From the NCBI RefSeq assembly GCF_006345805.1, contig NC_043020.1, positions 22,630,001-22,694,000 on the forward strand: a stretch of DNA of 64,000 bases, given 5' to 3'. This DNA is from Octopus sinensis (Eukaryota). Made by a program: the position numbers and the translations under genes. Shown here in pieces: positions 577 to 33,944 of this stretch. The notes beneath the pieces were generated by a model. The model saw nothing but the letters and a program-made list of their open reading frames with translations. It ran no database searches and was not told where the DNA came from. How positions within the stretch are numbered: position 1 is the stretch's first letter; each line of letters starts with the position of its first letter.

Positions 577-918
577 AGGTTTGCTCAGTGGTTTATCATC
601 GGAATTTGCGTCTGTTAATACCACCACGTCCTATTCATATTTTAGAGATTAAAATAATTTATTGAAAATGTTTGATACTTCTTGAAATATTCAACGTCCC
701 CTTGTGACCTTATGACATATGCAAGGGAACGTTATCGTTGAGTTTGTTCTATTCGAGATCGAAAGTGCGGCTGTAGACATTGAGCCAGCTTCACTCTAGA
801 TTCTATTGTTGAGCTTGTTTGGAGCTTTGCGTCGCCGAGAAAGGAATCCTTGGACAATTCTCTCGTTTCCAGCAATCAGAATATTTACTGGCGGAGTTCG
901 ATGACAACGCAGAACACA
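577..918 (+). promoter_or_regulatory. Putative promoter / non-coding exon 1 region of Z1 (splice donor deleted)
   Basis: Near-identical to 17623-17963 upstream of Z3; contains gagatcgaaagtgcggctg (755-773). It joins directly to the equivalent of 18691, skipping the donor seen in Z2 and Z3. Confidence 0.55.
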
Positions 919-1504: not shown

Positions 1505-1525
1505 ACTATTTCTATCTCATTTCAG
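1505..1525 (+). promoter_or_regulatory. Splice acceptor of Z1 coding exon (tttctatctcatttcag|aatatt)
   Basis: Polypyrimidine tract + CAG. Homologous sites lie upstream of Z2 (15640-15641, -), Z3 (19674-19675), Z4 (35104-35105) and Z5 (48218-48219, -). Confidence 0.7.
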
Positions 1526-1766
1526 AATATTGGATGGCATTGGCATTTAAGGGATATACCATCAATATTTATCACTTCTAGATAAAAGGAAGATTTTATA
1601 CAGACGTGAAATATTTCTAGAGTGAGACATTGCTCTTCTACATTGTCTGGAATTTGTAGATTCCTTTTTATTCTAATAAAATTTGGACAGATTTTCAAAG
1701 GAGTTTGCCACCGTTTCAATCAATCCAGGAATATATAAAAAGCAGTAAAAATATCCTTACAGAAGT

Positions 1767-4211
1767 ATGGATTTTTCTGAAGAATTGCCTAAGGAGGCAG
1801 AAGAATCTTCATTCTCTTTAGAATGTACCCTTGCTACTCAAAAGGATATGGATACAGAAGAGAAATTATATGAATGTGATATTTGTGGTAAATCATACTC
1901 TAAAAAACATATTTTAACTAATCACAGACGCATTCATTCCAGGAAAAAGTCACTTGAATGTAATATCTGTGGTAAATTATTCTATTACAAAAGTTATTTA
2001 GTTGATCACTTGCGTATTCATACAGGTGAAAAACCACATCACTGTGATATCTGTGGTAAATCATTCGCGCGTGCTAATGGCTTAACTCGCCATGTACGTA
2101 TTCATACAGGTGAGAAACCATATCAGTGTAATATTTGTGGGGAATCATTCTCTGACAGAGGTAACTTAGATAAACACAGAAATATTCATACTGGCGAGAA
2201 ATCATATCACTGCGATATCTGTGGAAAATCATTCTTTCAAAAGGTTCATTTAATTTCTCACAGACGTATTCATACTGGAGAGAGACCATATCGCTGTGAT
2301 GTTTGCGGTAGGTCGTTCTGTAATGGAAGTGCAGTAGCTCTTCACAAAGGTATTCATAGAGACGAAAAACCATATCATTGTGATATCTGTGGTAAATCGT
2401 TTCGTCGTAGGAATACATTAAATGTCCACAATCTTGTTCACACAGGGGAAAAACCTTATTGCTGTGATATCTGTGGTAAATCATTCTCTCGGACAAGCCA
2501 ATTAAAAATACACAAGAGACACATTCATACAAAAGAGAGACCGTTTGACTGTAATATCTGCGGTAAATCACTTACTCGTAGAAGTGCATTAACTGTTCAC
2601 AAACGTATTCATACCGGGGAAAAACCATATCACTGTGATATCTGTAGTAAATCATTCTCTCACGCAAATGCTTTAACTGTACACAAACGTATTCATACAG
2701 GGGAAAAACCTTATTGCTGTGATATCTGTGGTAAATCATTCCCTGTAAGTAATGCTTTAACTGTCCACAAACATACTCATTCGGGAGGAAAAGGATATGA
2801 ATGTGATATCTGTGGTAAAATATTCTCTTTTAGAAGTACATTAATTATTCATAAGCGTGTTCATTCAGGGGAAAAACCATATCGTTGTGTCATCTGTGGT
2901 AAGACTTTCAGCCAAACAAGTCAGTTAACAGTTCACAGACGTACTCATACAGGGGAAAGACCATATCGCTGTAATATCTGTAATAAATCATTCACCTATG
3001 GAAGTACACTGAAGTTTCACAAACGTATTCATACAGAGGAAAAACCATGTCACTCTAATATTTGTGATAAATCATTCTCTGGAACTAGTGACTTAGCGAT
3101 ACACAGCAGACGTATTCACACAAAAGAGAAAACCTATACCTGTAATATCTGTGGAAAATCATTCTCTACTGGAAGTGCATTAACTACTCACAAACGTATT
3201 CATATAGGGGAAAGGCCATATCATTGTAGTGTCTGTGGTAAATCCTTCTCTCGAAATTCTGGCTTAATTAAACACATGTGTTTTCATACAGGTGATAAGC
3301 CATTTCACTGCGATATCTGTGGTAAATCATACACTCGTAGAAATGCATTAACTGTTCATAAACGTGTTCATACAGGAGAAAAACCTTACCACTGTAATAT
3401 CTGTGGTAAATCATTCTCAAAAAAATATCTCTTAACTGTACATAAAAACACTCATACAGTAGAGAAATCATATGATTGTAAGATCTTTGGTAAATCCTTA
3501 TCTCAGACAAGTCAATTAACTGTCCATAGTCGTACTCATACAGGAGAGAAACCATTCCATTGTGATATCTGTGGGAAATCTTTCTCTTACAGTAAGGCTC
3601 TAACAAAGCATGTGCATCTTCATACTGGTGAGAAGGGATATCACTGCGATATCTGTGGTAAATCATACGCTAGTATATATACACTAACTACTCATAAACG
3701 TGTTCATACAGGAGAAAAACCTTACCACTGTGATATCTGTGGAAAATCGTTCACCAAAAAAAACCTCTTAACTGTACATAAAAACACTCATACAGGAGAG
3801 AAATCATATGATTGTAAGATCTGTGGCAAATCTTTGTCTCAGCCATATCATTTAACTGTTCATCGTCGTATTCATACAGGCGAGAAACCATTTCACTGTG
3901 AGATATGTGATAAATCATTCGCTCAAACAGCTCATTTAACAATTCACAGACGTAGTCATACAGGAGATAAACCCTATAAGTGTGATATCTGTGGTAAATG
4001 TTTCTCTCAAAAGAATGATTTAACCAAGCACAAGCGTGTTCATACAGGAGAAAAGCCGTATCAGTGTAATATATGTGGTCAATCATTCTCTGTAAATAAT
4101 GCTTTAACTGGCCACAAACGTATTCATACAGGAGAGAAACCTTATCGCTGTGAGATCTGTGGTAAATCATTTCCTCGCAGTTCTGACTTAACTGCACACA
4201 AATGTGTTTGA
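1767..4211 (+). CDS. Z1: tandem C2H2 zinc-finger protein, 814 aa, 28 finger units (F15 and F20 degenerate, F28 truncated)
   Basis: Intact ORF of C-x2-C-x12-H-x3/4-H repeats with TGEKP-type linkers; short acidic leader [10 protein letters not shown]. Confidence 0.95.
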   Translation: MDFSEELPKEAEESSFSLECTLATQKDMDTEEKLYECDICGKSYSKKHILTNHRRIHSRKKSLECNICGKLFYYKSYLVDHLRIHTGEKPHHCDICGKSFARANGLTRHVRIHTGEKPYQCNICGESFSDRGNLDKHRNIHTGEKSYHCDICGKSFFQKVHLISHRRIHTGERPYRCDVCGRSFCNGSAVALHKGIHRDEKPYHCDICGKSFRRRNTLNVHNLVHTGEKPYCCDICGKSFSRTSQLKIHKRHIHTKERPFDCNICGKSLTRRSALTVHKRIHTGEKPYHCDICSKSFSHANALTVHKRIHTGEKPYCCDICGKSFPVSNALTVHKHTHSGGKGYECDICGKIFSFRSTLIIHKRVHSGEKPYRCVICGKTFSQTSQLTVHRRTHTGERPYRCNICNKSFTYGSTLKFHKRIHTEEKPCHSNICDKSFSGTSDLAIHSRRIHTKEKTYTCNICGKSFSTGSALTTHKRIHIGERPYHCSVCGKSFSRNSGLIKHMCFHTGDKPFHCDICGKSYTRRNALTVHKRVHTGEKPYHCNICGKSFSKKYLLTVHKNTHTVEKSYDCKIFGKSLSQTSQLTVHSRTHTGEKPFHCDICGKSFSYSKALTKHVHLHTGEKGYHCDICGKSYASIYTLTTHKRVHTGEKPYHCDICGKSFTKKNLLTVHKNTHTGEKSYDCKICGKSLSQPYHLTVHRRIHTGEKPFHCEICDKSFAQTAHLTIHRRSHTGDKPYKCDICGKCFSQKNDLTKHKRVHTGEKPYQCNICGQSFSVNNALTGHKRIHTGEKPYRCEICGKSFPRSSDLTAHKCV

Positions 4212-4386
4212 TCTAATGAAGAACTTTATCACAGTGATATTTGTAATAAATAACTCATTTACTCAAAAACTTCCTTTGTGAAGTGAGTGAGAAATGGACA
4301 GACACATCAGCACTGTAATGTTGTCAGCAACACGACAGCCTCTCTAGTGTTGGCTCCAAAGTAAAATACATCCTGTACACTGTGAA

Positions 4387-4965
4387 ATTGATGGTGATAT
4401 GTAGGGCAGCCAGCCACAAAAACCATATTCCCTGAAGCAAACCATACATATGACTTTGTTTAAAACATGAAGTAGAAGTTTTTTTCTTTTTGTTTTCACT
4501 TCGATAGTAACAAACTTATTCACACAAATGTTGAAAGGATTTTACTATGATGTCTGGTAAATCATTCCCTCATGGAAACACCTTAACTACTCACAGGTAT
4601 GATTGTACAGGTGAGAAACCATTTCACTCCAATATCAGTGGTAAGTCATTCACTTCAAAATACACATTAGTAAACATTGATGGTGATATGTAGGGCAGCC
4701 AGCCACAAAAACCATATTCCCTGAAGCAAACCATACATATGACTTTGTTTAAAACATGAAGTAGAAGTTTTTTTCTTTTTGTTTTCACTTCGATAGTAAC
4801 AAACTTATTCACACAAATGTTGAAAGGATTTTACTATGATGTCTGATAAATCATTCCCTCATGGAAACACCTTAACTACTCACAGGTATGATTGTACAGG
4901 TGAGAAACCATTTCACTCCAATATCAGTGGTAAGTCATTCACTTCAAAATACACATTAGTAAACA
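4387..4965 (+). repeat. 289-bp direct tandem duplication in the Z1 3' flank, containing decayed finger sequence
   Basis: attgatggtgatatgtagggc starts at 4387 and again at 4676. The unit includes the remnant KSFPHGNTLTTHRYDCTGEKPFHSNISGKSF. Z2 and Z4 have a single copy. Confidence 0.9.
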
Positions 4966-5400
4966 AGACAAGAATGAGCTCTGAGGTGTTTTCACGCATG
5001 CATTTGGACATTTGGACTATTGGAATGTAAGCATTACACAATACTAATAAAGGAGCAACCAAAATCCCCAAAATGAATGAAAACTAACTAAATACTTCTA
5101 TGTAGACAATGTACTCAATATAACAGGTAGCAGACTCTTGCAGTGGGACTGAACCTAAAACAATGTTTTTGGGATGCAGATATCTTACCACAGCCACATC
5201 TATGCCTAAAAATGCAATTTTAGTTTGGGACTTCAATTCTAAAATGATTTTTTTGTAATTTATCTTTGGCTTGCAATTATCATAACCACATCCTAGTAAC
5301 CAATGTATTGTGAGTTAATTTTTTTATTTTCATTTATTAATGTTTATATATTTTTTTCTAAACAGTCACTTATATTATCCAACATATTCCATTACTTTTG

Positions 5401-7735: not shown

Positions 7736-10211
<2,476 letters not shown>

Positions 10212-13101: not shown

Positions 13102-15378
13102 TCAAACACATTTGTGTCTCGTTAAAGCAGAACTGTGAGAAAATGATTTACCACAGATCTCACAGTGATAAGGTTTCTCTCCTGTATGAATACGTTTGTG
13201 GCCAGTTAAAGCATTATTTACAGGGAATGATTTGCCACAGATATTACACTGATACGGCTTTTCTCCTGTATGAACACGCTTGTGCTTGGTTAAATCATTC
13301 TTTTGAGAGAAACATTTACCACAGATATCACACTTATAGGGTTTATCTCCTGTATGACTACGTCTGTGAATTGTTAAATGAGCTGTTTGAGCGAATGATT
13401 TATCACATATCTCACAGTGAAATGGTTTCTCGCCTGTATGAATACGACGATGAACAGTTAAATGATATGGCTGAGACAAAGATTTGCCACAGATCTTACA
13501 ATCATATGATTTCTCTCCCGTATGAGTGTTTCTATGTACAGTTAAGAGATATTGTTTTGAGAACGATTTACCACAGATATTACAGTGGTAAGGTTTTTCT
13601 CCTGTATGAACACGTTTATGTGCAGTTAATGTATATCTACTAGCATATGATTTACCACAGATATCGCAGTGATATGGCTTCTCACCACTATGAAGATGCA
13701 TATGTTTTGTTAGAGCTTGACTACGAGAGAAAGATTTCCCACAGATATCACAATGGTATGGTTTCTCTCCTGTATGAGTACGACTATGAACAGTTAATTG
13801 ATAATTTCTTGAGAAAGATTTATCACAGATATTACAGTGATATCCCTTCTCACCAGTATGAAGATGCACATGCTTTGTTAGAGCCTTACTGTAAGAGAAA
13901 GATTTACCACAGATATCACAGTGATATGGCTTATCACCTGTATGAAAACACAGGTGTCTAATTAAGCCAGAATTTCGAGAGAAGGATTTACCACAGACAC
14001 TACAATGGTATGGCCTTTCCCCTGTATGAATACGTTTGTGAGTAGTTAATGCACTTCCAGTAGAGAATGATTTTCCACAGATATTACAGGTATAGGTTTT
14101 CTCTTTTGTGTGAATACGTCTGCTGTGTATCGCTAAGTCACTAGTTCCAGAGAATGATTTATCGCAAATATCAGAGTGACATGGTTTTCCCTCTGTATGA
14201 ATACGTTTGTGAAACTTCAGTGTACTTCCATAGGTGAATGATTTATCACAGATATTACAGCGATATGGTCTTTCCCCTGTATGAGTACGTCTGTGAACTG
14301 TTAACTGACTTGTTTGGCTGAACGTCTTACCACAGATGACACAACGATACGGTTTTTCCCCTGAATGAACACGCTTATGAACAGTTAATGTACTTCCAGA
14401 AGCGAATACTTTACCACAGATATCACAGTCATATCCTTTTCCTCCCGAATGAATACGTTTGTGGACAGTTAAAGCACTTGCATAAGAGAATGATTTACCG
14501 CAGGTATCACATGGATATGCATTTTTCCCTGTATGAATACGTTTGTGAACAGTTAATGTACTTCTACCAGCAAATGATTTACCACAGATATTACAGTGAA
14601 ACGGTCTCTCTTTTGTATGAATGTATCTCTTGTGTATTTTTAATTGGCTTGTCTGGGTGAATGATTTACCACAGATATCACAGCAATAAGGTTTTTCCCC
14701 TGTGTGAATACGTTTGTGGACAGTTAATGTATTCCTACGACGAAATGATTTACCACAGATATCACAATGATATGGTTTGTCGTCTCTATGAATACGTTTG
14801 TGAAGAGTTACTGCACTTCCATTACTGAACGACCTACCGCAAACATCACAGTCATATGGTTTCTCTCCAGTATGAATACGTTTGTGAGAAATTAAATGAA
14901 CCTTTTGAAAGAATGATTTTCCACAGATATCGCAGTGATATGATTTCTCGCCAGTATGAATATTTCTGTGTTTATCTAAGTTACCTCTTTCAGAGAAAGA
15001 TTCCCCACAAATATTACACTGATATGGTTTCTCACCTGTATGCATACGTACATGGCGAGTTAAGCCATTAGCACGAGAGAATGATTTACCACAGATATCA
15101 CAGTGATGTGGTTTTTCACCTGTATGAGTACGTAAGTGATCAACTAAATAACTTTTGTAATAGAATAATCGACCACAGATATTACATTCCTGTGACTTTT
15201 TCCTGGAATGAATGCGTTTGTGAGTAGTTAAAGTACGTTTTTCAGAGAATGATTTACCACAAATATCACATTCATATAATTTCTCTTCTGTATCCATATC
15301 CTTTTGAGTAGCAAGGGTACATTCTAAAGAAAACGGTGATTCTTCTGTCTCCTTTGGTAATTCTTCAGAAAAATCCAT
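13102..15378 (-). CDS. Z2: tandem C2H2 zinc-finger protein, 758 aa, 26 finger units; close paralog of Z1 and Z3
   Basis: Intact ORF; same leader as Z3; last five fingers nearly identical to Z1. Confidence 0.95.
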   Translation of the reverse strand: MDFSEELPKETEESPFSLECTLATQKDMDTEEKLYECDICGKSFSEKRTLTTHKRIHSRKKSQECNICGRLFYYKSYLVDHLRTHTGEKPHHCDICGKSFSRANGLTRHVRMHTGEKPYQCNICGESFSERGNLDKHRNIHTGEKSYHCDICGKSFFQKVHLISHKRIHTGEKPYDCDVCGRSFSNGSAVTLHKRIHRDDKPYHCDICGKSFRRRNTLTVHKRIHTGEKPYCCDICGKSFTQTSQLKIHKRYIHTKERPFHCNICGKSFAGRSTLTVHKRIHTGKNAYPCDTCGKSFSYASALTVHKRIHSGGKGYDCDICGKVFASGSTLTVHKRVHSGEKPYRCVICGKTFSQTSQLTVHRRTHTGERPYRCNICDKSFTYGSTLKFHKRIHTEGKPCHSDICDKSFSGTSDLAIHSRRIHTKEKTYTCNICGKSFSTGSALTTHKRIHTGERPYHCSVCGKSFSRNSGLIRHLCFHTGDKPYHCDICGKSFSYSKALTKHVHLHTGEKGYHCNICDKSFSRNYQLTVHSRTHTGEKPYHCDICGKSFSRSQALTKHMHLHSGEKPYHCDICGKSYASRYTLTAHKRVHTGEKPYHCNICGKSFSKQYLLTVHRNTHTGEKSYDCKICGKSLSQPYHLTVHRRIHTGEKPFHCEICDKSFAQTAHLTIHRRSHTGDKPYKCDICGKCFSQKNDLTKHKRVHTGEKPYQCNICGKSFPVNNALTGHKRIHTGEKPYHCEICGKSFSHSSALTRHKCV

Positions 15379-15406
15379 ACTTCTGTAAGGATATTTTTAC
15401 CGCTTT

Positions 15407-15469
15407 TTATATATTCCTGGATTGATCAAAACATTTATACTGCAATGTTTCCATGGTGGCAAACTCCAT
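15407..15469 (-). other. uORF MEFATMETLQYKCFDQSRNI* in the Z2 5' UTR (second ATG in GCCACCATGG context)
   Basis: Reverse complement reads acaATGgagtttgccaccATGgaaacattgcag..aatataTAA; identical to Z3 19846-19908. Confidence 0.6.
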
Positions 15470-16537
15470 TGTAAATCTGTCCAAATTTTATTAGAATAAA
15501 AAGGAATCTACAAATTCCAGACAATGTAGAAGAGCAATGTCTCACTAGAAATATTTCACTTCTGGATAAAATCTTCCTTTTATCTAGAAGTGATCAATAT
15601 TGATGGTATATCCCTTAAATGCCAATGCCATCCAATATTCTGAAATGAGATAGAAAATAGTATAAGATATTAAAGATATTTAAAGAGTAGACATTCAATA
15701 TTGAAACTTAACAATTTTGTATTGATATACATGGCTGCTGCCATGTTAAAAGCATCCAGTCCACACTGTAATGTGGTTGGTATTTGGAAGGGCATCCAGC
15801 TGTAAAAACCATGCCAAAACTACCCTCACCAGTGCTAGTGTCACATAACAAGCACAGAGCCCACTCTGTGGAGTGATTGAGGTTAGCAAGAGCATCCAGC
15901 CATAAAATCCTTGCTAAAATACCCACTCGCAAAACATTTTCCCCACATATTTCTTTATAATCATAATCTGTGCCATTCGAAAGGTATTTGTATAGATTTT
16001 CATCAAAAGAAATCCATTTTCCTGAAAGTTATGAGGGAAACAAGTCAGATCGTGTGAATTTTCCGAAACTCCGCTCCCCAACCCTTTGGGAAATTCTATC
16101 CAATAAATCTCTATATACTCTGAATCTACAGTAGCTAAGTAGGATTTGTTCAAACATTTGTGAAAAAGTATCAATTTTTCTGGGAGTTACGAGGCAACAA
16201 AGTCGTGAGGGTGGGGTACATATCTGTAGTTATGGCGAAAGTTTTATCATCTATAGAAAAGAATATGGAAATATTTCCCCCCAAATTGTTATTATTTTAA
16301 TAATAAATCTCTGAACGAGGTATAGACAATAACTGCACGACAAATATACTTCACATTATTAATATTTTCAGTTCAGTATAATTCCTGTATTCTTGAAGAA
16401 AACATCTTTTACCAATGCCGTTTATATATTTTGTCCCCATTCATACAATTACCATGATTACCTTATCAGACAAGTGGGACACAATTCTATTATTTAAATG
16501 ATATTACTACAGCATTAAAACAAACATTTATCAACTT

Positions 16538-16731
16538 ACCGTTGGCAGATGTAAACAACGAATGAATGGTGTTCTGCGTTGTCATCGAACTCCGCCAGTA
16601 AATATTCTGATTGCTGGAAACGAGAGAAATGTCCAAGGATTCCTTTCTCGGCGACGCAAAGCTCCAAACAAGCTCAACATTAGAATCTAGAGTGAAGCTG
16701 GCTCAATGTCTACAGCCGCACTTTCGATCTC
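16538..16731 (-). promoter_or_regulatory. Putative non-coding exon 1 of Z2 with donor ACG|GTAAGT
   Basis: Mirror image of 17801-17997. Donor GT at 16539-16538; the shared motif at 16713-16731 abuts the L1 3' end. Confidence 0.6.
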
Positions 16732-16734
16732 AAA

Positions 16735-17622
16735 TAAATCTTTATTATAATCATGCGATCTTACATAGATAGGGACATAACAAGACATACAAATACAAAG
16801 AATGTTATATAAGTTCGAATGAGACTTAAAAATTTAGTTGTAATATGACATGAACGAAAACTTGGCTTACTTTTGCCTTTACAATGAGAACTTTTGTGCG
16901 TTTTTTGTTTTAATAAAAATAGAAAACAACATATGTTAAAACGAAAAAGGGGGAAATGCAGGTTCCAAATTTTGAACCCGGCAGCCTATAAGGCCCAGCA
17001 ACTAATTTTTTCCTTTCTTTTATGATTAAGCTGGGTTACTAACACCCACCTTTCTCATCACATCCTTCCAACGTTTCACATACTCTTTCTGTGACAGGTT
17101 CCTCTTCTCCAACCCCATCTGAAGAAGTTTAACAAACCTGGGCCAGAGACAAGAGACTGTCACAAAACCTTCCATTCTGGTTCTCCACACACACACTTTC
17201 AGTACTGCCATCGTACAGAAAAACAAGCTTCACCTTCCTTTGAGAGTCCAGTTGGCGGTATCATCTTAATCATGGATCCAACCGACAGCTGTACTCGTCC
17301 CAGATGCGACAACCCATGTTCGACGTAACTTATAAAAGCTTGACAGCTCCTTGACAATGTACAAAAGCGTGTTGAACGGTTTCATCGTCCAACCCACATC
17401 TTGGACACGTCGGTGGCACTGACATTCCGTGCCTAAATAACTTATCGCGAACAGCTAATGCATTCCTATAGCACTGCCAAGCCAGGGATTTTTGGTAATT
17501 GTCTAAATACCCCGGCCTGAAGGTTTTCTTAAACAGGTTGGAGAGTTGATTCTCGTCGAACCCCTGAGCCCTTCCTAGAACGTCGTCATTTTTTGCCTCG
17601 ACCAGCTCTCTATAGAACACCG
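16735..17622 (-). mobile_element. 5'-truncated L1/Tx1-clade LINE 3' end (zf-RVT-like Cys motif + 3' UTR)
   Basis: ORF 17330-17620 ..WQCYRNALAVRDKLFRHGMSVPPTCPRCGLDDETVQHAFVHC resembles the L1/Tx1 ORF2 C-terminal zinc knuckle; T-rich 3' UTR ends in aataaagatt. Confidence 0.75.
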
Positions 17623-17997
17623 AGGTTTGCTCAGTGGTTTATCATCGGAATTTGCGTCTGTTAATACCACCACGTCCTATTCATATTTTAGAGATTAAAA
17701 TAATTTATTGAAAGTGTTTGATACTTCTTGAAATATTCAACGTCCCCTTGTGACCTTATGACATATGCAAGGGAACGTTACCGTTGAGTTTGTTCTATTC
17801 GAGATCGAAAGTGCGGCTGAGACACTGAGCCAGCTTCACTCTAGATTCTATTGTTGAGCTTGTTTGGAGCTTTGCGTCGCCGAGAAAGGAATCCTTGGAC
17901 AATTCTCTCGTTTCCAGCAATCAGAATATTTACTGGCGGAGTTCGACGACAACGCAGAACACAATTCATTCGTTGTTTACATCTGCCAACGGTAAGT
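17623..17997 (+). promoter_or_regulatory. Putative promoter / non-coding exon 1 of Z3 with donor ACG|GTAAGT (GT 17992-17993)
   Basis: Consensus donor; homologous to the Z1, Z2 and Z4 upstream regions; motif at 17801-17819. Confidence 0.6.
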
Positions 17998-18212
17998 TGA
18001 TAAATGTTTGTTTTAATGCTGTAGTAATATCATTTAAATAATAGAATTGTGTCCCACTTGTCTGATAAGGTAATCATGGTAATTGTATGAATGGGAACAA
18101 AATATATAAACGGCATTGGTAAAAGATATTTTCTTCAAGAATACAGGAATTATACTGAACTGAAACTAATAACAATTTTGGGGAAAATATTACCATATTC
18201 TTTTCTATAAAT

Positions 18213-18402
18213 TAGTGGTTTTCAACCAGAGTTCCGCCAGTACAGTCCAGGGTTTCCGCAAGAAGTTACAAAACTGCTAAAATCGCCAGTAATTTTTAAT
18301 TCTCCTGTGCAGATATGTGTGCATAAGACTATTAAATTATTCATCGTGCCAGTGTAATGTTTCCTTGGGGTTCCGCCCCAGCAAAAAGTTTGAAAAGCAC
18401 TG
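18213..18402. mobile_element. hAT-type MITE (190 bp) with 8-bp TSD
   Basis: TIRs tagtggttttcaa / ttgaaaagcactg; TSD ctataaat (18205-18212) / ctatagat (18403-18410). Empty site in the Z2 arm at 16249-16256. Confidence 0.8.
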
Positions 18403-19845
18403 CTATAGATGATAAAACTTCCGCCATAACTACAGATATGTACCCCACCCTCACGAATTTGTTGCCTCGTAACTTCCAGAAAAATGGATACTTTTTCACA
18501 AATGTTTGAACAAATCCTACTTAGATACTGTAGATTCAGAGTATATAGAGATTTATTGGATAGAATTTCCCAAAGGGTTGGGGAGCGGAGTTTCGGAAAA
18601 TTCACACGATCTGACTTGTTTCCCTCATAACTTTCAGGAAAATGGATTTCTTTTGATGAAAATCTATACAAATACCTTTCGAATGGCACAGATTATGATT
18701 ATAAAGAAATATGTGGGGAAAATGTTTTTCGAGTGGGTTGGAAGAGGAGTATCGGAAAAATGGAGTTTCGGATGAATATGACCACATAAGTTGGAATTCC
18801 TCCGTTCTGACGGGGGATTTTTTTCAAATTTTAATGTTTTTTTTTCACTAGCATTCGAAATGATCTTTTTTTTTTCACCCCTCTTCCACCCCTTGCCCAC
18901 CTCACCTGCACTATTCTCATACATGCACACACAAACACTGATTGAAGTGTAACAAACTAGTGGCATCACAAGAAGTAGAATAAATAATTAGAACATCCCT
19001 GGTGTGGATAATGGAATGAAAACAATGTACACTTGCAGATTTAATAAAAGGTTCAGTTCCAAATTCTGAGAACATTATTGAATATGAGAAGCAGCTGAAG
19101 AGGTCTTGAAGATACAACTGAAGGCATTAGTCCAGATATAACGTATACTCACTGATTTTTGGGGGTTTTTTTGTGAATAGGTAATGTTACACAATCTGAA
19201 GGTGTAAATATGTAAACTTCACACAACTTTGTTTGATGTAATTTAAATAGCAAATTAAAATGTAAAGTTTGGTGGGTAAGGTAAGTGTTTATTGTTTCAT
19301 CATCATCATTTAATGTCCATCTTACCTGCATGCATGGGTAGGACAGTTGACCAGAGCTGATCTAGTATAAAAACTACCCTAGGTTACTGTGGCTATTTTA
19401 GCAAGGATTTTATGGCTGGATGCTCTTCCTAACCTCAATCACACGACAGAGTGGGCTCTGTGCTTGTTACGTGACACTAGCACTGGTGAGGGTAGTTTTG
19501 GCATGGTTTTTACAGCTGGATGCCCTTCCAAATACCAACCACATTACAGTGTGGACTGGATGCTTTCAACATGGCAGCAGCCATGTATATCAATACAAAA
19601 TTGTTAAGTTTCAATATTGAATGTCTACTCTTTAAATATCTTTAATATCTTATACTATTTTCTATCTCATTTCAGAATATTGGATGGCATTGGCATTTAA
19701 GGGATATACCATCAATATTGATCACTTCTAGATAAAAGGAAGATTTTATCCAGAAGTGAAATATTTCTAGTGAGACATTGCTCTTCTACATTGTCTGGAA
19801 TTTGTAGATTCCTTTTTATTCTAATAAAATTTGGACAGATTTACA

Positions 19846-19908
19846 ATGGAGTTTGCCACCATGGAAACATTGCAGTATAAATGTTTTGATCAATCCAGGA
19901 ATATATAA
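19846..19908 (+). other. uORF MEFATMETLQYKCFDQSRNI* in the Z3 5' UTR
   Basis: ATG at 19846 and an in-frame Kozak-consensus ATG at 19861; stop 28 nt before the main ATG, out of frame with it. Confidence 0.6.
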
Positions 19909-19936
19909 AAAGCGGTAAAAATATCCTTACAGAAGT

Positions 19937-21313
19937 ATGGATTTTTCTGAAGAATTGCCAAAGGAGACAGAAGAATCACCGTTTTCTTTAGAATGTACCC
20001 TTGCTACTCAAAAGGATATGGATACAGAAGAGAAATTATATGAATGTGATATTTGTGGTAAATCATTCTCTGAAAAACATACTTTAACTGCTCACAAACG
20101 CATTCATTCCAGGAAAAAGTCACAGGAATGTAATATCTGTGGTAGATTATTCTATTACAAAAGTTATTTAGTTGATCACTTACGTACTCATACAGGTGAA
20201 AAACCTCATCACTGTGATATCTGTGGTAAATCATTCTCTCGTGCTAATGGTTTAACTCGCCATGTACGTATTCATACAGGTGAGAAACCATATCAGTGTA
20301 ATATTTGTGGGGAATCTTTCTCTGAAAGAGGTAACTTAGCTAAACACAAATACATTCATACAGGAGAGAAATCATATCACTGCGATATCTGTGGAAAATC
20401 ATTCTTTCAAAAAGTTCATTTAATTTCTCACAAACGTATTCATACTGGAGAGAAACCATATGACTGTGATGTTTGCGGTAGGTCATTCACTAATGGAAGT
20501 GCAGTAACTTCTCATAAACGTATTCATGCAAGAGAGAAGCCATATCATTGTAATATTTGTAGTAAATCATTCACTGATAGAAGTAATTTGACTGTTCACA
20601 AACGTATTCATGGAGACGAAAAACCATATCATTGTGATATCTGTGGTAAATCATTTCTTCATAGGAGTAAATTAACTATCCACAAACGTATTCACACAGG
20701 GGAAAAACCGTATTGCTGTGATATCTGTGGTAAATCATTCTCTCGGACAAGCCAGTTAACAATACACAATAGATACATTCATACAAAAGAGAAACCATAT
20801 CATTGTAATATCTGCGGTAAATCTTTTGCTGATGGAAGTGCATTGACTGTTCATAAACGTATTCACACAGGGGAAAAACCATATCACTGTGATATCTGTG
20901 GTAAATCATTCTCTTATGCAAGTGCTTTGACTGTTCACAAACGTACTCATTCGGGAGGAAAACCATACGACTGTGATACCTGTGGTAAATTATTCTCCTC
21001 TGGAAGTACGTTAACTGTTCATAAACGTGTTCATTCAGGGGAAAAGCCACATTGTTGTGTCATCTGTGGTAAGACGTTCAGCCAAACAAGTCAGTTAACG
21101 ATACACACGCGACGCAGTCATACAAGAGAGAAACCATATCGCTGCGATACCTGTGGTAAATCATTCCCTGTTGGAAGTCAATTAACAGTTCACAGACGTA
21201 CTCATACAGGGGAAAGACCATATCACTGTAATATCTGTGGAAAATCCTTCACCTATGGAAGCACATTAAAGTTTCACAAACGTATTCATACAGAGGAAAA
21301 ACCATATCTCTGA
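19937..21313 (+). CDS. Z3: tandem C2H2 zinc-finger protein, 458 aa, 15 intact fingers, truncated by a TGA in finger 16
   Basis: Intact ORF ending KPYL* where paralogs have KPYHC / KPCHS; decayed fingers follow. Confidence 0.88.
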
Positions 21314-22090
21314 GATATCTGTGTGTATTTCATTCAAAATAAAAACCATATCACTGGTATCTTTGGTAAACCATTCTCTTGAACAAGTTATTTAACAATA
21401 CATAAGAGACGTATTAATACAGAGAGTTTGTATCACTGGGATAACTGTATTAAACCATTCACTGATGCAAGTACATTAACTCCTCACAAATGTATTCATA
21501 CAAAAAAAAACCCATATAACAAAGGATCTGTGGTGTATTTTTCTCTCTGAGTTCTGGCCTAATTAGCCACATATATTTTCATGCAAGAGATAAGCCCTAT
21601 CATTGTAATATTTGTGTTAAATCTATCTTAATGCACTCAGAACAGAAGAGATGCTATATTACTGGTGATATTTGTGGTCCCCAAAGTCTATCTCCTCCTC
21701 ACCGTGGTGGGGACGCTGGCAATGGGTAGTGTCAGAGCTATGTCATTGGGAACTTCGGTTCTTGGTAGGGCCACCCAAGGCAGATTGGTCTGACACCAAG
21801 TGGTATTAGGGCCACAACCCGGAAGACGGGGCTCTGGTGAAAATCCTTGGAGTGTCTGTTTCGGCAACCAGTGGCTCTTCGGTCGTTCTGTCCCTGTGTC
21901 TGCGGACAATCTGCGGCAAACAGGATGTCTCCACATTCGGGATTGTTGGGGACCGCTTGTGAAATCCACATATTCCCACGAAACTTCTTCCATGAGTAGA
22001 AGCCGACTCAACCCGCCCAGGGTGAATGTCGCCACAAGTACAAGATATTTGTGGTAAATCTTTTTGTCAATCATTTCATTTGACTGTTCT
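21314..22090 (+). pseudogene. Decayed continuation of the Z3 finger array
   Basis: Frameshifted finger remnants (aaaccatatcactgg, gatatttgtggtaaatc, cacaaatgtattcatac), interrupted by an insertion at 21679-22043. Confidence 0.75.
21679..22043 (+). mobile_element. Short retroposon with (CAAGTA)n-like end and 12-bp TSD gatatttgtggt
   Basis: TSD at 21667-21678 and 22044-22055, inside a finger remnant; second copy at 26017-26336. Confidence 0.75.
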
Positions 22091-25814: not shown

Positions 25815-26510
25815 CCCCAGAGAAAGTTCAAATCACTAATATTTGTGGTACATCATTCTCTGTAATGCCTTACCTACTCACAAATGCATTATTACAGCAG
25901 AAAGACCCGATGGTTTTGTTATGTGGTACATTCTTTTCTCAAAATAGGGATTTAACTAAACACAGATTCATTCATTCTAAAGAAAAAACTGTATTACAAT
26001 GATATTCACAGTAAGTGTCAGAGCTATACCGTCGGGAACTTTGGTTCCTGGTAGAGCCACCCAAGGAGGATTGGTCTGACACCAAGTGGTATTAGGGCCA
26101 CAACCCGGCAGACGGGGCTCAGGTGAAAATCCTTGGAGTGTCTGCTTTGGCAACCGGCGGTTCCTCAGTCATTCTGTCCCTGCGTCTGTGGACAAACTGC
26201 GGCAAACAGGACGTCTCTACATGCGGGATTGTTGGGGACCGCTTGTGAAATCCACATATTCCCACAAAACTTCTTCCATGAGTAGAAGAAGCCAACTCAA
26301 CCCGTCCAGGGTGAATGTCACCGCAAGTACAAGTAAAGTAAGTATAAAGAACAGGACATCAGCATACAAATCCTGCCAACAACATAACAGCCTCTCCAAT
26401 GCTGACTCCATGATGAAATACATCCAGTACACTGTCAAAGTGACAGTGATAGGTTGGCCGCCAACCATAAAAAGCATTCCCCCTGAAATGGAGCATAGAA
26501 GTGAAGTGTT
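25815..26510 (+). pseudogene. Displaced decayed terminal fingers and 3' flank of Z3
   Basis: Finger remnants (atatttgtggtacatcattctctg, tctcaaaatagggatttaactaaacacag). 26345-26500 resembles the Z1/Z2/Z4 3' flank (acatcagca..acagcctctc..aaatacatcc.gtacactgt). Confidence 0.6.
26017..26336 (+). mobile_element. Second copy of the (CAAGTA)n retroposon, with a shorter left end
   Basis: Aligns to 21728-22043; candidate TSD agtaagt (26010-26016 / 26337-26343). Confidence 0.7.
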
Positions 26511-27593: not shown

Positions 27594-29509
27594 AGATCTT
27601 TTCCTTTTGAATGGCAGATGGCAACACAATTTCTAGTTAACTAAACACTTTTAAACTTCGTATACTGGTAGAATGTGTTTATAAAACATCATTTTTTCTT
27701 GACTTTATTGAGAAAATTCTATAGTTTGTAAGATATTTCGTCTGAAAATCTGAGCATTTTGGCAATTTAAACCAATCGATTACCTCCATTCAACTAAAAT
27801 CATTTGCTGCATCTAAAACTGAGACAACATCCTGTAACTAACCGTAACTCTAATTTTTTTTTTCTTAATTGTTAAATTAATTTAATTGTTACACGTGTAA
27901 AAAAACCCGAAAGCAATGGAAAATGATTTAAACAATTAACAAACAAAATAATTTTATAATTTTATATACACACTTTCCGTACGTATACGGAGTGTGTATG
28001 ATGTCTTAGTTTTAGACACAGCAAATGATTTTAGCTCAAAAGAGAGCATAGGATTGGTTAAAATTCGAAAAATTAAACTACGTTAAACAAATTACAATTT
28101 TCTCAAGAAAGCCAAGTGAAAAAAATGTTTTATTTTGACACATTAATATAATAATAATATAATGAAATTATTGTATACAGTGCTCAGGTGCACCACAACT
28201 TGTCAGAAAGTGCATATAAAGTACATGCAGCAGTGTAGAAATGTCTGGAAAGTGAACATGCTTGTGTGTGTATGGAGGGGAGAAAATCAAGTTTAGTGTT
28301 GCCGAATCTCAGGAAACATGGAAGTTTTGAAGGATGCAGTGCTCCGACAACTAACAACCAATGCCGGCAGTTTGTTCCACGCTTCAGCAACTCTCAGCAT
28401 GAAAAAATGTTTCCTGAAGTCATGGAAGCTGTGCTGTTTTCTTACTTTGTAAATATGTCCACGGGTGTTAGATGGGTGGATTTTGAAGAGGTGCTCAGAG
28501 TTATTGTTTGTGCGATGGTTGATAATTTTATGGGTGTCTGCCAAGTCAGCTGCCAGACATCGGAGTTTCAATGTGTCCATGCCCAGGGAAGTAAGGCGTT
28601 CAGGATATGGCAAATGCCTGATGGAGGATATTCTTTTGGTTGCACGTCGCTGAACAGCTTCCAGACGATTGATGTCCTGGGCAAGATAGGGGTTCCAGAC
28701 CGGTGATGCAAATTCCAGGTGAGGTCTTACCATAGCTATATAAAGCCGCAGATAGATAGCCGGAGAGCGGCTCACAAAGGATTTGGTGAGTGATGCCAAG
28801 ACACCCTCAGCCTTCTTGACAATTTTAGCAATGTGTTTTGTCCAACACAAATCACTGTCGACAATAACACCCGGGTCACGTTCACTTGAAGACTTTTTGA
28901 GACTAGTGTTGTGGAGAGAGTAGGTGGACGCTGGGTTTCTCCTCCCAAAATGCATGGTGGTACATTTGTCCACAGCCAGCTTGAGTTGCCAGTCCATGAT
29001 CCACTGCTGCATTGTGTCCAGGTCTGCTTGCAATAGAGATCCATAGTGTACAGGATTTGACCTCTTTATTTCGAGGTACAGCTTGATGTCATCTGCATAT
29101 TTCAGCACTGTGGCATTCTTTAAGTTGGCATCTATGTCATTAACATATGCAACAAATAAAAGGGGGCCAAGAACAGATCCCTGCGGCACACCAGTTGTCA
29201 TCTCATAGGGCGAAGAGTGCTGTCCTAGAACTGTGACAACCTCTTGCGAAGGGGACGAACAGGAGAGTGGGGTCTCTGCTTTGAGTGCACATACTTCCAG
29301 AACCCTTTGCTGTCAGGGTTAGCTGCAATGCGTTGTTCAAATTCAAGCACTGCCTTTTTTGTCACCTGCTTGAGGTGGTTGGCTGACCTATTGCGCTTTT
29401 TCCTGTTGCTCTCTGATTTGTGCAATTTGTATTCCCATTCTACCAGTATACAAAGTTTTAAAGTGTTTAGTTAACTAGAAATTGTCTGCCGTTCAAAAGG
29501 AAAAGATCC
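27594..29509. mobile_element. GGATC-terminated DNA element with long (about 230-bp) inverted arms and 8-bp TSD, carrying a nested LINE
   Basis: Ends agatcttttccttttgaa / ttcaaaaggaaaagatcc; TSD ctactatt / ctactatc. 27680-27820 mirrors 28000-28135. Confidence 0.75.
28148..29436 (-). mobile_element. 5'-truncated CR1/L2-group LINE (RT ORF 28293-29201) with (TTA)n tail
   Basis: GVPQGSVLGPLLF..YADD..PHLEFASPVWNPY..EAVQRRATK..RVAEAWNKLP; frameshifted upstream piece 29225-29425. Confidence 0.9.
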
Positions 29510-29689: not shown

Positions 29690-30588
29690 TAAAAGGCACC
29701 ATTCGAGCGTGATCGCTACCAGTGTTGCCTTACTGGCACTTGTGCCCCGTGCTAGTAGGGTGCCAAGAACACCATCCGAGTGTGATTGTTGCCAGAGCGG
29801 CTAACTGGCTTCCGTGCCGGTGGCACGTAAACGACACCATTCGAGCGTGATCATTACCAGCGTCACCTTACTGGCACCTGTGCCGGTGGCATGTGTAAAA
29901 AGATTCGAGCGAGGTCGTTGCCAGTGCCACCTGACTAGCCCCTGTGCCAGTGACACGTAAAAAGCACCCACTACACTCTCTCTCTATATATATATATGTG
30001 TGTGTGTGTGGTTCAAATGTACAGAAAACAAAAGACAAGGGAACAACAAGTAGGCCCATTAGTTTGACGCTCGGGAAGAATGGAAAAGTTTTCATACACT
30101 CTTCGACAGAAAAGGATGAGGTGGGAAAATGGTGAGAGAGAGAAAAGTGTGTCGGGATTAACGATTTATACATAAGCATATGTACGCGTGTGTCAAAAGA
30201 AGGAATGATTATAATACGCTAAAGCGGTGATTATCAAATTTTTGTTGATAAGCATCTTCTTTCACCAAAATATGGCATCCACCCTAGGTTTGGCAATCAT
30301 ATTTGAGGGGAGAGACGGATAAACAGTAGTGGCACATAAAAAAAAAAACACCATCCGAGCGTGGTCGTTCGCCAGCCTCGTCTGGCACCTGTGTCGGTGG
30401 CACATAAAATCACCCACTACACTCTCGGAGTGGTTGGCGTTAGGAAGGGCATCCAGCTGTAGAAACACTGCCAGATCTGACTGGCCTGGTGCAGCCTTCG
30501 GGCTCCCCAGACACCAGTTGAACCGTCCAACCCATGCTAGCATGGAAAGCGGACGTTAAATGATGATGATGATGATGATGATGATGAT
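29690..30588 (+). mobile_element. Cluster of SINE family B pieces with internal tandem subrepeats
   Basis: Repeated caccattcgagcgtgatc / gtgccggtggcacgtaaa units; (gat)n tail at 30560-30588. Confidence 0.65.
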
Positions 30589-31099: not shown

Positions 31100-31230
31100 C
31101 AAATGATTTTAAAACCTAAGTATCGCATGAGATCTAAATATTTTATCGCTATGAAAAAATTACATTTCACCAGAAACACTCAGCACCAACTTCTGCAATT
31201 CTCTAAGGAGACGTTACCGTTATAATATTT

Positions 31231-31249
31231 GACATCGAAACTGCGGCTG
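31231..31249 (+). promoter_or_regulatory. Z4 copy of the conserved upstream motif (gacatcgaaactgcggctg)
   Basis: Preceded by acgttaccgtt, as at Z3 (17776-17819). Confidence 0.5.
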
Positions 31250-31374
31250 GTGACATAAAGTCAACTCCACTTGTTCATTTCAGTTAAATTTAAATTTTAT
31301 GGTTGAAGAAACGAAGAGCAATTTGAATGTTGGCCGAGAATGAAGTCGACAAATCATTGGTGAACCTCATTTTA

Positions 31375-32091
31375 ATCAGATTTACAGCTGTCAGCTGAAT
31401 CTATAATAAAGAAGATACCGCCAACTTGACTCACAAAGGAAGGTAAGGCATGTTTTTAACTGTACAGGTGGAATTACTGAAAGAGTGTGTGTGGAGGACG
31501 AGAACGGAAGGTTCGGTGAAAGGGTCCTTCACCTCTGGCCCCGGGAGAGTTTCTACCTACGCCTCTACTACAGATTGAGCAGGGCCATCTACCTGAAGGG
31601 ATTTGTGGTTTGCCTGCCTTCTACTTATTAGGACTTTGGTTTTAGCTAGGTTGACTCTAAGGCCCTTCGTTTCTAATCCTTGTTTCCACAACTGAAACTT
31701 CTCCAGTTCTGATAGTGACTCAGCAATTAGAGCAAGACGGGGTTGGAGAGGAGGACCCTGCCACCGAGAGAATACGAGAAACGATGGAAGGATGTGATGA
31801 GAAAGGTGGGTGTTAGTAACCCAGCTTTAATCATTGACGAAAGGAAAAGATCGTTGCTGGGCCTTTTAGGCTGCCGGGTTCGATCTTTTAATCTTTTTAT
31901 TCGTTTTCTTGCTTTGTTTTCTTATGTATTAAAAAAAAAAACTTCTATTCTAAGGTTAAATTAATGAATTATATAAAATATATTTTGGTAAATTTTTAAA
32001 TGATATACGAACTCATATAACATTTTTGTTTTTTGTTTGTCCCGCGTTGTCCCATTCTGTACAAGATCGTTTTTCGATCATAATAAAGATT
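31375..32091 (+). mobile_element. Second L1/Tx1 3' fragment, same family as 16735-17622, within the putative Z4 exon 1
   Basis: Shares ..RWKDVMRKVGVSNPA, gttgctgggcct..aggctgccgggttc and the terminal aataaagatt; interrupted at 31546-31736. Confidence 0.8.
31546..31736 (-). repeat. 191-bp near-identical copy of RTE sequence 33031-33221, inserted in the L1 fragment
   Basis: agagtttctacc..gcaattagagcaag at both loci, equal length. Confidence 0.9.
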
Positions 32092-32171
32092 CCATTTTAA
32101 CAATTCAGATATTTAGTTTGGTGATAACATATAACACGTTGATCCACTGTTTACATCTGAAAATGGTAAGC
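32092..32171 (+). promoter_or_regulatory. 3' part of putative Z4 exon 1 with donor ATG|GTAAGC (GT 32166-32167)
   Basis: tgtttacatctgaaaatg|gtaagctgataaacgtttgttttaatgctgta matches Z3 tgtttacatctgccaacg|gtaagttgataaatgtttgttttaatgctgta. Confidence 0.6.
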
Positions 32172-33915: not shown

Positions 33916-33944
33916 ATATATATCATATATATATATATATATAT

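What the first reader, a model, noticed from the sequence alone, without database searches (positions are those of the whole stretch)
15379..19936. Head-to-head Z2/Z3 duplication whose symmetry axis is a truncated L1/Tx1 (possible retrotransposon-bridged fold-back duplication)
Seen: 16731 running left mirrors 17801 running right, through exon 1, intron, 5' UTR and the first fingers. The spacer is a 5'-truncated L1/Tx1 3' end (16735-17622). Its 3' terminus abuts the Z2 motif, while its truncated 5' end joins promoter sequence in the opposite orientation (17623, equivalent to Z1 position 577), and there is no TSD. A plain insertion would leave collinear flanks. Established: L1-bridged fold-back inversions are known from human somatic genomes. 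Inference: a TPRT event may have created this gene copy, which would be a route to ZNF cluster expansion, and Z2 now has L1 3' UTR in place of its upstream promoter.
Basis: partly seen in the sequence, partly recalled or inferred. Interest (0 to 1): 0.8.

Follow-up and report, generated by a model that had tools for sequence, protein, structure and literature searches.

The report
Retrotransposon scar between two mirrored genes
Two neighbouring octopus zinc-finger genes lie head to head with a broken LINE-type retrotransposon between them, but the right-hand gene is an old resident whose front half was recently overwritten, so the element did not create a new gene.

Summary
The window is Octopus sinensis chromosome CM016882.1. 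Z2 (minus strand, inner end 16736) mirrors Z3 (plus strand, inner end 17796) at about 98% identity through exon 1, the intron and the first fingers. The 1,059-bp spacer has two parts. The first is a 5'-truncated APE-type (L1-like) non-LTR fragment at 16737-17622. The second is 173 bp (17623-17795) shared only with Z1 577-749. The flanks are not collinear and there is no target-site duplication (TSD). A second copy of the same element, in exon 1 of paralogue Z4, is an ordinary insertion with a TSD.

Z3 is not a new gene copy. Identity to Z2 falls from 99% to 88%. Beyond a premature stop, a collinear finger array continues at about 78% identity. Tree topology switches from (Z2,Z3) to (Z1,Z2) within the ORF. 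So an old plus-strand ZNF already sat there, and its first 2.7-2.9 kb was recently overwritten from Z2.

The most likely history is gene conversion between inverted paralogues. It was followed by a retrotransposon insertion at Z2's exon 1 that removed the centre of the pair. A single event primed by the retrotransposon is not excluded. Orthologous loci could not be reached.

The parts
13102..15378 (-). Z2 ORF: a C2H2 zinc-finger protein of 758 aa with about 24 fingers.
   Evidence: The exact product is on record on GCA_006345805.1 CM016882.1. The 5' part is closest to Z3 and the 3' half is closest to Z1.
15383..16539 (-). Putative Z2 intron. It lacks the 650-bp block that Z3 keeps and carries a 70-bp segment (16299-16368) that Z3 lacks.
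   Evidence: A GTAAGT donor and a CAG acceptor are conserved in Z2 and Z3. The assignment is inferred and has no transcript support.
16540..16736 (-). Putative non-coding exon 1 of Z2. This is the inner end of the left arm.
   Evidence: It is about 97-98% identical to Z3 17796-17993 and to Z1 750-918.
16737..17025 (-). 3' UTR of the non-LTR element. Its 3' terminus (...ATAATAAAGAT, no poly(A) run) lies against Z2 exon 1. Six further bases (TTATTT, 16737-16742) are of ambiguous origin.
   Evidence: Searches show the same terminal bases as the Z4 copy. One search places the natural ORF2 stop at 17026-17028.
17026..17622 (-). C-terminal remnant of ORF2 (CCHC / zf-RVT region), 5'-truncated. It has two 1-bp frameshifts in T runs and no nonsense substitution in about 190 codons.
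   Evidence: P0150 is a relative that reads in a single frame across both frameshift sites.
17623..17795 (+). A 173-bp segment upstream of Z3 exon 1 (putative core promoter). It occurs once at the axis, is absent from Z2, and matches Z1 577-749.
   Evidence: There are 2 substitutions in 173 bp. A possible 2-4-nt microhomology (AGGT) at the junction with the element is inferred from homologue codons.
17796..17993 (+). Putative exon 1 of Z3. This is the inner end of the right arm.
17994..19932 (+). Putative Z3 intron. It contains a 193-bp MITE-like insertion (18210-18402, flanked by CTATA) and a 650-bp block (18739-19388) that is deleted in Z2 but partly shared with Z1 and Z4.
19937..21313 (+). 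Z3 ORF of 458 aa. It ends at a premature stop inside a finger linker (PYL* where Z2 has PCHS). It carries two extra fingers relative to Z2.
21314..21680 (+). Decayed, collinear continuation of the Z3 finger array. This is the old part of Z3.
   Evidence: Searches give 78% identity to Z2 ORF nt 1090-1483, in register. One search counts 74 Z3-odd sites against 14 others.
577..918 (+). Upstream segment plus exon 1 of Z1. It serves as a paralogous 'empty-site' reference that is contiguous across both junction positions (576/577 and 749/750).
   Evidence: Z1 397-521 is homologous to Z4 upstream 30164-30289, so the Z1 arrangement is ancestral.
31385..32091 (+). Second, older copy of the same non-LTR family. 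It is an ordinary 5'-truncated insertion into exon 1 of Z4, with an imperfect TSD of about 17-23 bp (31368-31384 and 32093-32115) and a later SINE-like insertion (31546-31736).
2117..4998 (+). Z1 ORF 3' half plus 3' flank. This is one arm of a second, tail-to-tail inverted pair whose partner is Z2 15028-12606, with no copy of this element family at its axis.
   Evidence: The 3' flanks differ by 3.5-3.7% and some 100-nt windows are 100% identical.

Best explanation
This is a structural scar in a C2H2 zinc-finger cluster whose inverted neighbours exchange sequence. It is not a functional module.

An old plus-strand paralogue (Z3) already lay head to head with Z2. Recently, at about 1.8% non-coding divergence, the first 2.7-2.9 kb of Z3 was overwritten with Z2 sequence. 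The overwritten stretch runs from at least -173 through exon 1, the intron and the first 4-7 fingers. The outer end of the overwrite was resolved by homology inside the finger array. This is gene conversion in the direction Z2 to Z3.

An APE-type, L1-like non-LTR retrotransposon then inserted by target-primed reverse transcription at the start of Z2 exon 1. Its 5' junction lies not on Z2's own upstream DNA but at -173 of Z3. Z2's upstream segment, the intergenic centre and Z3's DNA beyond -173 were therefore lost. The loss happened either while the insertion was resolved or in a later deletion. Loss during resolution could be degradation of the reciprocal end followed by microhomology joining, or an endonuclease-independent patch of a break at the palindrome centre.

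Shown: the anatomy, the age layers, the direction of copying, and the absent TSD. Inferred: the order of events and the deletion.
For: - Z3 is old beyond about 20500. Per-finger identity to Z2 runs 0.99, 0.98, 0.99, 0.96, 0.95, 0.96, 0.94, then 0.92-0.87. Beyond the stop, a collinear tail follows at 78%.
- Synonymous divergence rises from 0.03 to at least 0.23 along the ORF.
- In the tail, 74 sites have Z3 as the odd one out, against 9 for Z1 and 5 for Z2. In the intron 3' part plus ORF nt 1-354, 33 sites are Z1-odd against 4 and 4.
- Direction of copying. Z1 is 4-5% from both Z2 and Z3 in the 5' part, the same as the Z1-Z2 distance elsewhere. Z3 therefore received Z2 sequence.
- Exchange is recurrent here. 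The Z1/Z2 tail-to-tail arms reach 96-100% identity with no copy of this element family at the axis. Z1 577-918 is a separate young patch ending in a non-homologous junction.
- The element family normally makes TSDs and collinear flanks, as the Z4 copy shows. The Z2 copy has neither.
- Relative to the Z1 reference, exactly 577-749 is missing on the Z2 side.
- Literature. 5'-truncated L1 insertions are prone to target-site deletions and to processing of the reciprocal end, with microhomology (PMC11702581). TSD-less germline L1 insertions with target deletions are documented in the human genome (PMC1920257).
Against: - It needs two events at the same spot within about 2% divergence: an overwrite reaching at least -173, then an insertion with deletion.
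- The inner end of the overwrite must have been resolved in DNA that, judging from Z4, was only about 70% alike between old paralogues. That is awkward for classical two-ended conversion.
- No pre-insertion allele, orthologue or remnant of Z2's upstream segment was found in the window. The deletion is therefore inferred, not seen.
Confidence: 0.55

Rival explanations
1. A single event primed by the retrotransposon. This is the closest surviving form of the reader's idea.

TPRT nicked Z2 at the start of exon 1. The end of the truncated cDNA was not joined to the reciprocal end. Instead it annealed by microhomology at -173 of Z2 on the sister chromatid, or folded back. DNA synthesis then copied Z2 in inverted orientation for about 2.7-2.9 kb. 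The nascent strand re-annealed in register in the finger array of the old neighbour Z3.

The result would replace Z3's 5' half and delete Z2's upstream segment and the intergenic DNA in one step. This is an overwrite of an existing gene, not the creation of a new one.
For: - One event explains several features together. These are the element at the axis, the absent TSD, a young tract starting exactly at the element's 5' junction, a donor with an intact upstream segment, and the loss of that segment from Z2.
- The outer junction is homologous and in register, as expected for synthesis-dependent annealing.
- The element's 3' terminus is intact to the same base as the classical Z4 copy. This fits initiation by TPRT.
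- L1-bridged foldbacks and local inverted duplications at insertion sites are documented in tumours and in L1-induced cells (PMC7058536; PMC11702581).
- A possible AGGT microhomology lies at the 5' junction (inferred).
Against: - It requires several kb of resection or flap removal on the reciprocal end, to reach the Z3 ORF.
- Neutral divergence is not uniform along the supposed single tract. Intron divergence is 1.1-1.8%. Synonymous divergence in ORF nt 1-588 is about 7% (9 of 133 sites). The first 381 bp beside the axis diverge by 2.9%.
- Z1 577-918 shows the same young age without any element.
- Inverted arms at 96-100% exist next door with no copy of this element family at the axis.
- No fixed germline example is known to me.
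Confidence: 0.25
2. Assembly artefact. The junction at 17622/17623, or the whole inverted arrangement, is a misjoin, a chimeric long read or an uncollapsed haplotype in GCA_006345805.1.
For: - Only one assembly carries the locus. No independent reads or contigs could be retrieved.
- ZNF clusters rich in repeats are prone to misassembly.
- Arm divergence of about 1.8% is in the range of allelic divergence.
Against: - The window has no Ns.
- The arms differ by three large indels and diverge to 78% distally, so they are neither alleles nor a read palindrome.
- Both junctions are single-copy sequence joined to well-defined element ends.
Confidence: 0.05
3. The element next to exon 1 is ancestral. 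It would have been inherited by Z2 and Z4 from a common ancestor gene, so it has nothing to do with the Z2/Z3 arrangement.
For: A second copy lies in the same orientation next to Z4 exon 1. Its divergence (73-80%) is similar to that of the flanking gene sequence.
Against: - The two copies have different insertion points, about 110 bp apart in exon-1 coordinates, and different 5' truncation points.
- The Z4 copy has its own TSD, with exon 1 and upstream sequence continuing on its 5' side.
- Z1 and Z3 are uninterrupted at both sites.
Confidence: 0.02

Closest known systems
L1-mediated fold-back inversions and local inverted duplications in human tumours and in L1-induced cell clones (Rodriguez-Martin et al. 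2020, PMC7058536; Mendez-Dorantes et al. 2024, PMC11702581)
   Same: A 5'-truncated LINE insert lies exactly at the junction of two head-to-head copies. The 3' end is at the priming site and the 5' end joins DNA of the opposite orientation. There is no TSD.
   Different: - The known cases are somatic or experimental, usually span an arm or megabases, and create copy-number gain.
- Here the right arm existed beforehand: it has an old collinear tail and an identity gradient.
- The young tract is under 3 kb and ends in a homologous junction.
- The host is an octopus germline.
- The element has no poly(A) tail and no recognisable TTTT/AA site.
L1 insertion-mediated deletions and non-classical (TSD-less, endonuclease-independent) L1 insertions in the human germline (Sen et al. 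2007, PMC1920257)
   Same: There is no TSD. Target DNA is lost relative to an empty-site reference. Microhomology at the 5' junction is possible. The insert sits at a place prone to breakage, the centre of an inverted repeat.
   Different: - The element's 3' terminus is complete, whereas many endonuclease-independent inserts are 3'-truncated.
- The empty-site reference here is a paralogue (Z1), not a true pre-insertion allele. The deletion is therefore inferred.
Arm-to-arm gene conversion in palindromes and concerted evolution in tandem or inverted ZNF clusters
   Same: Inner arms are near-identical, identity decays outward, and phylogeny is mosaic among neighbours. The parts of inverted neighbours that lie physically closest are the most alike: Z2 5' with Z3 5', and Z2 3' with Z1 3'.
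   Different: The partners were old, strongly diverged paralogues rather than a palindrome kept uniform since birth. The inner end of the tract abuts a retrotransposon.
APE-type L1-superfamily non-LTR retrotransposons (L1/Tx1 group)
   Same: There is a CCHC zinc-knuckle region (zf-RVT) after the RT. Homologues have APE + RT + zf-RVT. Copies are 5'-truncated, and the classical copy has a TSD of about 20 bp.
   Different: Neither copy has a poly(A) tail; both end ...AATAAAGAT. Clade placement (L1 versus Tx1) was not tested.

Membership tests
APE-type L1-superfamily non-LTR retrotransposon (fragment) | An ORF2 C-terminal CCHC / zf-RVT region, homologous to ORF2 proteins that carry an APE endonuclease and RT. 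| tested here: met
   PF13966 at E = 2e-10. There are 307 homologues. P0243 has Exo_endo_phos + RVT_1 + zf-RVT and P0139 has RVT_1 + zf-RVT.
APE-type L1-superfamily non-LTR retrotransposon (fragment) | Insertion by TPRT leaves a target-site duplication and collinear flanks. | tested here: not met
   This is met for the Z4 copy: TSD at 31368-31384 and 32093-32115, with flanks that rejoin on Z1 860-886. It is not met for the Z2 copy, which has no TSD and an inverted 5' flank.
APE-type L1-superfamily non-LTR retrotransposon (fragment) | A poly(A) or simple-repeat 3' tail. | tested here: not met
   Both copies end ...ATAATAAAGAT and are followed directly by flank.
Tx1 clade specifically | Phylogenetic placement of the RT with Tx1-group elements, together with site-specific insertion. 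| not tested
   The RT domain is absent from the fragment. No reference Tx1 or L1 sequences were compared. The two insertion sites share no clear motif.
L1-bridged fold-back / inverted duplication | A LINE insert lies at the junction of two head-to-head copies, with its 3' end at one breakpoint and its truncated 5' end joined to the inverted copy. | tested here: met
L1-bridged fold-back / inverted duplication | The inverted copy was generated by the event. The arms should be of one age up to an abrupt outer breakpoint, and copy number should rise. | tested here: not met
   There are three identity layers (about 98%, about 90%, 78%), a collinear old tail and a topology switch. A gene already occupied the position.
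L1-bridged fold-back / inverted duplication | The element and the arm divergence have the same age. | not testable with these tools
   No family consensus was available. The only other copy is 73-80% identical, and related loci L002-L004 are at most 69% identical.
LINE insertion-mediated deletion / TSD-less non-classical insertion | No TSD, with target DNA missing relative to the pre-insertion state. | tested here: inconclusive
   The absence of a TSD is shown. The segment 577-749 is missing on the Z2 side relative to paralogue Z1. No true pre-insertion allele was obtainable.
Gene conversion between inverted paralogues | Mosaic phylogeny along the gene, with a high-identity tract bounded by older sequence. 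| tested here: met
   The direction Z2 to Z3 is inferred from Z1 distances.

The most novel reading that the evidence does not exclude
A germline TPRT intermediate of an L1-like element at Z2's exon 1 primed, in a single event, an inverted copy of about 2.7-2.9 kb of Z2. The copy re-annealed inside the finger array of the old neighbouring paralogue. This would be gene conversion primed by a retrotransposon, which rejuvenated the 5' half of a decaying ZNF gene and stripped Z2 of its upstream segment. It would be a fixed evolutionary counterpart of the L1 foldbacks so far seen only in tumours and cell models.
Probability: 0.25. Interest if true: 0.65.

Novelty: new member of a known kind. Interest (0 to 1): 0.35.

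Why it matters
As it stands, this is a well-resolved example of how an octopus ZNF cluster is remodelled. Inverted neighbours exchange kilobase tracts. A retrotransposon insertion with a non-canonical 5' junction removed the shared centre of a head-to-head pair. One gene (Z2) was left without its usual upstream 173 bp.

It does not show a new route to gene birth. If comparative data showed that the element and the young tract arose together, it would be the first germline-fixed case of LINE-primed fold-back copying. That would link retrotransposition mechanistically to concerted evolution of ZNF genes.

Tried and rejected
1. A whole-protein search with Z2 returned only generic vertebrate ZNFs. 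A search with the N-terminal 85 aa found no candidates. The element fragment found nothing through the word index.
2. Exact look-ups of Z1, Z3, the element ORF and a junction-spanning ORF found no second assembly or read contig. Only Z2 is on record, and only in GCA_006345805.1.
3. The PDB sequence search with the element fragment gave no significant hit.
4. Loci for related proteins (L002-L004, from a metagenome and from Logan runs) are at most 69% identical in DNA, so they are useless for a family consensus or for dating.
5. I rejected the idea that the element is ancestral and shared by Z2 and Z4. The Z4 copy is an independent insertion with its own TSD.
6. I first saw a coincidence in Z1-Z3 homology ending exactly at the element junction. 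This is trivial: Z3 simply has no more native sequence beyond that point.
7. I considered flipping of the spacer by recombination between the arms. The flipped isomer has the same non-collinear topology, so this explains nothing.
8. The shared 1-bp frameshift (a run of T5 where T6 is needed) in both element copies cannot be used for dating. Recurrent slippage in a homopolymer is plausible.


Full report
**Source and setting.** The exact Z2 product (window 13102-15378, minus strand) is on record on chromosome CM016882.1 of GCA_006345805.1, at about 22.63-22.66 Mb. Papers held in the library list that accession together with Octopus sinensis. The window holds six C2H2 zinc-finger ORFs:
- Z1, plus strand, 1767-4211
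- Z2, minus strand, 13102-15378
- Z3, plus strand, 19937-21313
- Z4, plus strand, 35553-38192
- two more on the minus strand, at 46032-47627 and 56749-58236

The left arm runs leftward from 16736 and mirrors the right arm running rightward from 17796. The aligned blocks are 96.9%, 98.2% and 98.9% identical and continue into the ORFs. Non-coding divergence is 23 substitutions in 1,265 aligned bases, or 1.8%.

The arms also differ by three large indels:
- a 193-bp MITE-like insertion in Z3 (18210-18402, flanked by CTATA)
- a 70-bp indel (Z2 16299-16368)
- a 650-bp block (18739-19388) that Z3 shares in part with Z1 and Z4 but Z2 has lost

With no Ns in the window, this argues against a read-palindrome or haplotig artefact.

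**The spacer (16737-17795) has two parts.**

The first part, 16737-17622, read on the minus strand, is the C-terminal end of a non-LTR ORF2 followed by a 3' UTR of about 289 bp.
- Pfam zf-RVT hits at E = 2e-10.
- An exhaustive HMMER search found 307 relatives, the best at 62% identity.
- One relative, P0243, has Exo_endo_phos + RVT_1 + zf-RVT. The element is therefore APE-type and L1-like. The 'Tx1' label was not tested.
- Against homologues, the remnant reads in three frames joined by two 1-bp deletions in T runs, with no nonsense substitution over about 190 codons. It is not heavily decayed.

The second part, 17623-17795, is found elsewhere only at Z1 577-749, with 2 differences in 173 bp. 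It is oriented with Z3.

**A control copy of the element in the same window.** A second copy lies at 31385-32091, on the plus strand and 73-80% identical. I first suspected that element-next-to-exon-1 was an inherited arrangement. It is not.

The 5' flank of this copy (31128-31385) aligns to the upstream segment and the first part of exon 1 of Z1 and Z3. Its 3' flank continues exon 1. Both flanks overlap on the same stretch, Z1 860-886. That gives an imperfect TSD at 31368-31384 and 32093-32115.

So this family makes ordinary TSD-flanked, collinear, 5'-truncated insertions. Its 3' terminus is ...ATAATAAAGAT, without poly(A), in both copies. Against this control the Z2 copy is truly anomalous. 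Its 3' terminus is complete and abuts Z2 exon 1 at the Z1-equivalent position 749/750. Its 5' end abuts position 577 in the opposite orientation. There is no TSD.

Z1 serves as an empty-site reference. It is uninterrupted at both positions, and its further upstream DNA (397-521) is homologous to Z4's far upstream (30164-30289).

**Z3 is not a new copy.** Several lines agree.
- Per-finger identity of Z3 to Z2 runs 0.99, 0.98, 0.99, 0.96, 0.95, 0.96, 0.94, then 0.92-0.87. Z3 has two extra fingers.
- The ORF ends at a stop inside a linker. The finger array then continues in register as a decayed tail.
- That tail aligns collinearly to the next fingers of Z2 and Z1 at only 78% and 76%.
- Synonymous divergence between Z2 and Z3 rises from 0.03 at the 5' end to at least 0.23 distally.

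Three-way site patterns switch along the gene:

| Region | Z1 odd | Z2 odd | Z3 odd |
|---|---|---|---|
| Intron 3' part + ORF nt 1-354 | 33 | 4 | 4 |
| Tail beyond the stop | 9 | 5 | 74 |

Introns show that neutral divergence since the arms became alike is below 2%. The tail cannot therefore have decayed since then. An old plus-strand ZNF stood there already.

Z1 is 4-5% from both Z2 and Z3 in the 5' part, the same as the Z1-Z2 distance elsewhere. Copying therefore ran from Z2 into Z3.

**Exchange between inverted neighbours is general here.**
- Z1 and Z2 form a tail-to-tail inverted pair. Their arms are mostly 90-100% identical over the ORF 3' half and differ by 3.5-3.7% in the 3' flank.
- The axis of that pair holds a 2.1-kb (TA)n tract and no copy of this element family.
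- Z2 is thus a mosaic. Its 5' part matches Z3, which lies next to its 5' end. Its 3' part matches Z1, which lies next to its 3' end.
- Z1 577-918 is a further young patch. It has no private differences in exon 1, against 3 each in Z2 and Z3. It ends at a non-homologous junction that removes 727 bp, including the exon 1 donor site.

**Mechanism.** Any history must join the element's truncated 5' end to -173 of an inverted promoter-exon 1 unit whose donor had no element at 749/750.

- *Two steps (preferred, 0.55).* Z2 overwrote the 5' part of Z3 back to at least -173. The element then inserted at Z2 exon 1, and the centre of the pair was lost. The loss came during resolution of the 5' end, as a patch of a centre break, or later. 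5'-truncated L1 insertions are known to carry target deletions and processing of the reciprocal end, with microhomology (PMC11702581). TSD-less germline insertions with deletions are documented in the human genome (PMC1920257).
- *One step (0.25).* The cDNA end switched to Z2 on the sister chromatid at -173 and copied about 2.7-2.9 kb in inverted orientation. It then re-annealed in the old Z3 array. This is related to the L1 foldbacks of PMC7058536 and PMC11702581.

The one-step model is economical. It needs long resection, however, and does not fit the uneven neutral divergence along the tract. Neither version creates a gene. Both leave Z2 without the 173 bp.

**What could not be done.** The choice between one and two steps therefore stays open.

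Noticed in passing
window 16737-17622 and 31385-32091: The only two copies of this non-LTR family in 64 kb both sit in sense orientation within about 110-135 bp of the same homologous position in the first exon of paralogous ZNF genes. The insertions are independent. A rough post-hoc chance estimate is about 1-3%. This may reflect a target or open-chromatin preference.
   Followed up: partly
window 577-4998 versus 16736-12606: Z1 and Z2 form a second, tail-to-tail inverted pair. Its arms are mostly 90-100% identical over the ORF 3' half and 3' flank. Z2 is a mosaic: Z3-like at its 5' end and Z1-like at its 3' end.
   Followed up: yes
window 7899-10015: A 2.1-kb imperfect (TA)n tract (about 1,080 copies, 82% matches) lies near the axis between Z1 and Z2. 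Long TA tracts can form cruciforms and are fragile.
   Followed up: no
window 918-921: Z1 lacks 727 bp relative to Z3 (17964-18690), including the exon 1 splice donor. Identity to Z3 drops from 98.5% to about 85% exactly at this junction. Z1's 5' end is therefore a young patch joined non-homologously, and Z1 may not splice like Z2 and Z3.
   Followed up: partly
window 18210-18402: A 193-bp MITE-like insertion sits in the Z3 intron. Its terminal inverted ends are AGTGGTTTTCAA / TTGAAAAGCACT and it is flanked by CTATA. It is absent from Z2, so it post-dates the homogenisation.
   Followed up: partly
window 152-369: A MITE-like element with 68-nt inverted arms (84% complementary) lies between TA-rich flanks upstream of Z1.
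   Followed up: no
window 21680-22040 and 26014-26333: A GC-rich repeat (89.7% identity between the two copies) interrupts the decayed Z3 finger tail. Finger-like sequence resumes at about 22040-22080.
   Followed up: no
window 4387-4965: A perfect-looking tandem duplication lies in Z1's 3' flank (289-bp unit, 2 copies, 99% identical). The single-copy version is present behind Z2 and Z4.
   Followed up: no
L001 (window 3102-25378, reversed): The gene calls on record merge Z3's start (19937) into an 831-residue product that runs past 25378. They also merge Z1's end into a 1,694-residue product. The public gene models here probably read across the premature stop or fuse neighbouring genes.
   Followed up: no
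window 28293-29201 and 33243-33989 (minus strand): Two further reverse-transcriptase fragments (RVT_1, E = 1e-16 and 3e-21) flank Z4's upstream region. They are unrelated to the element at the axis. Several SINE-like families occur at 5-10 copies each across the window.
   Followed up: no
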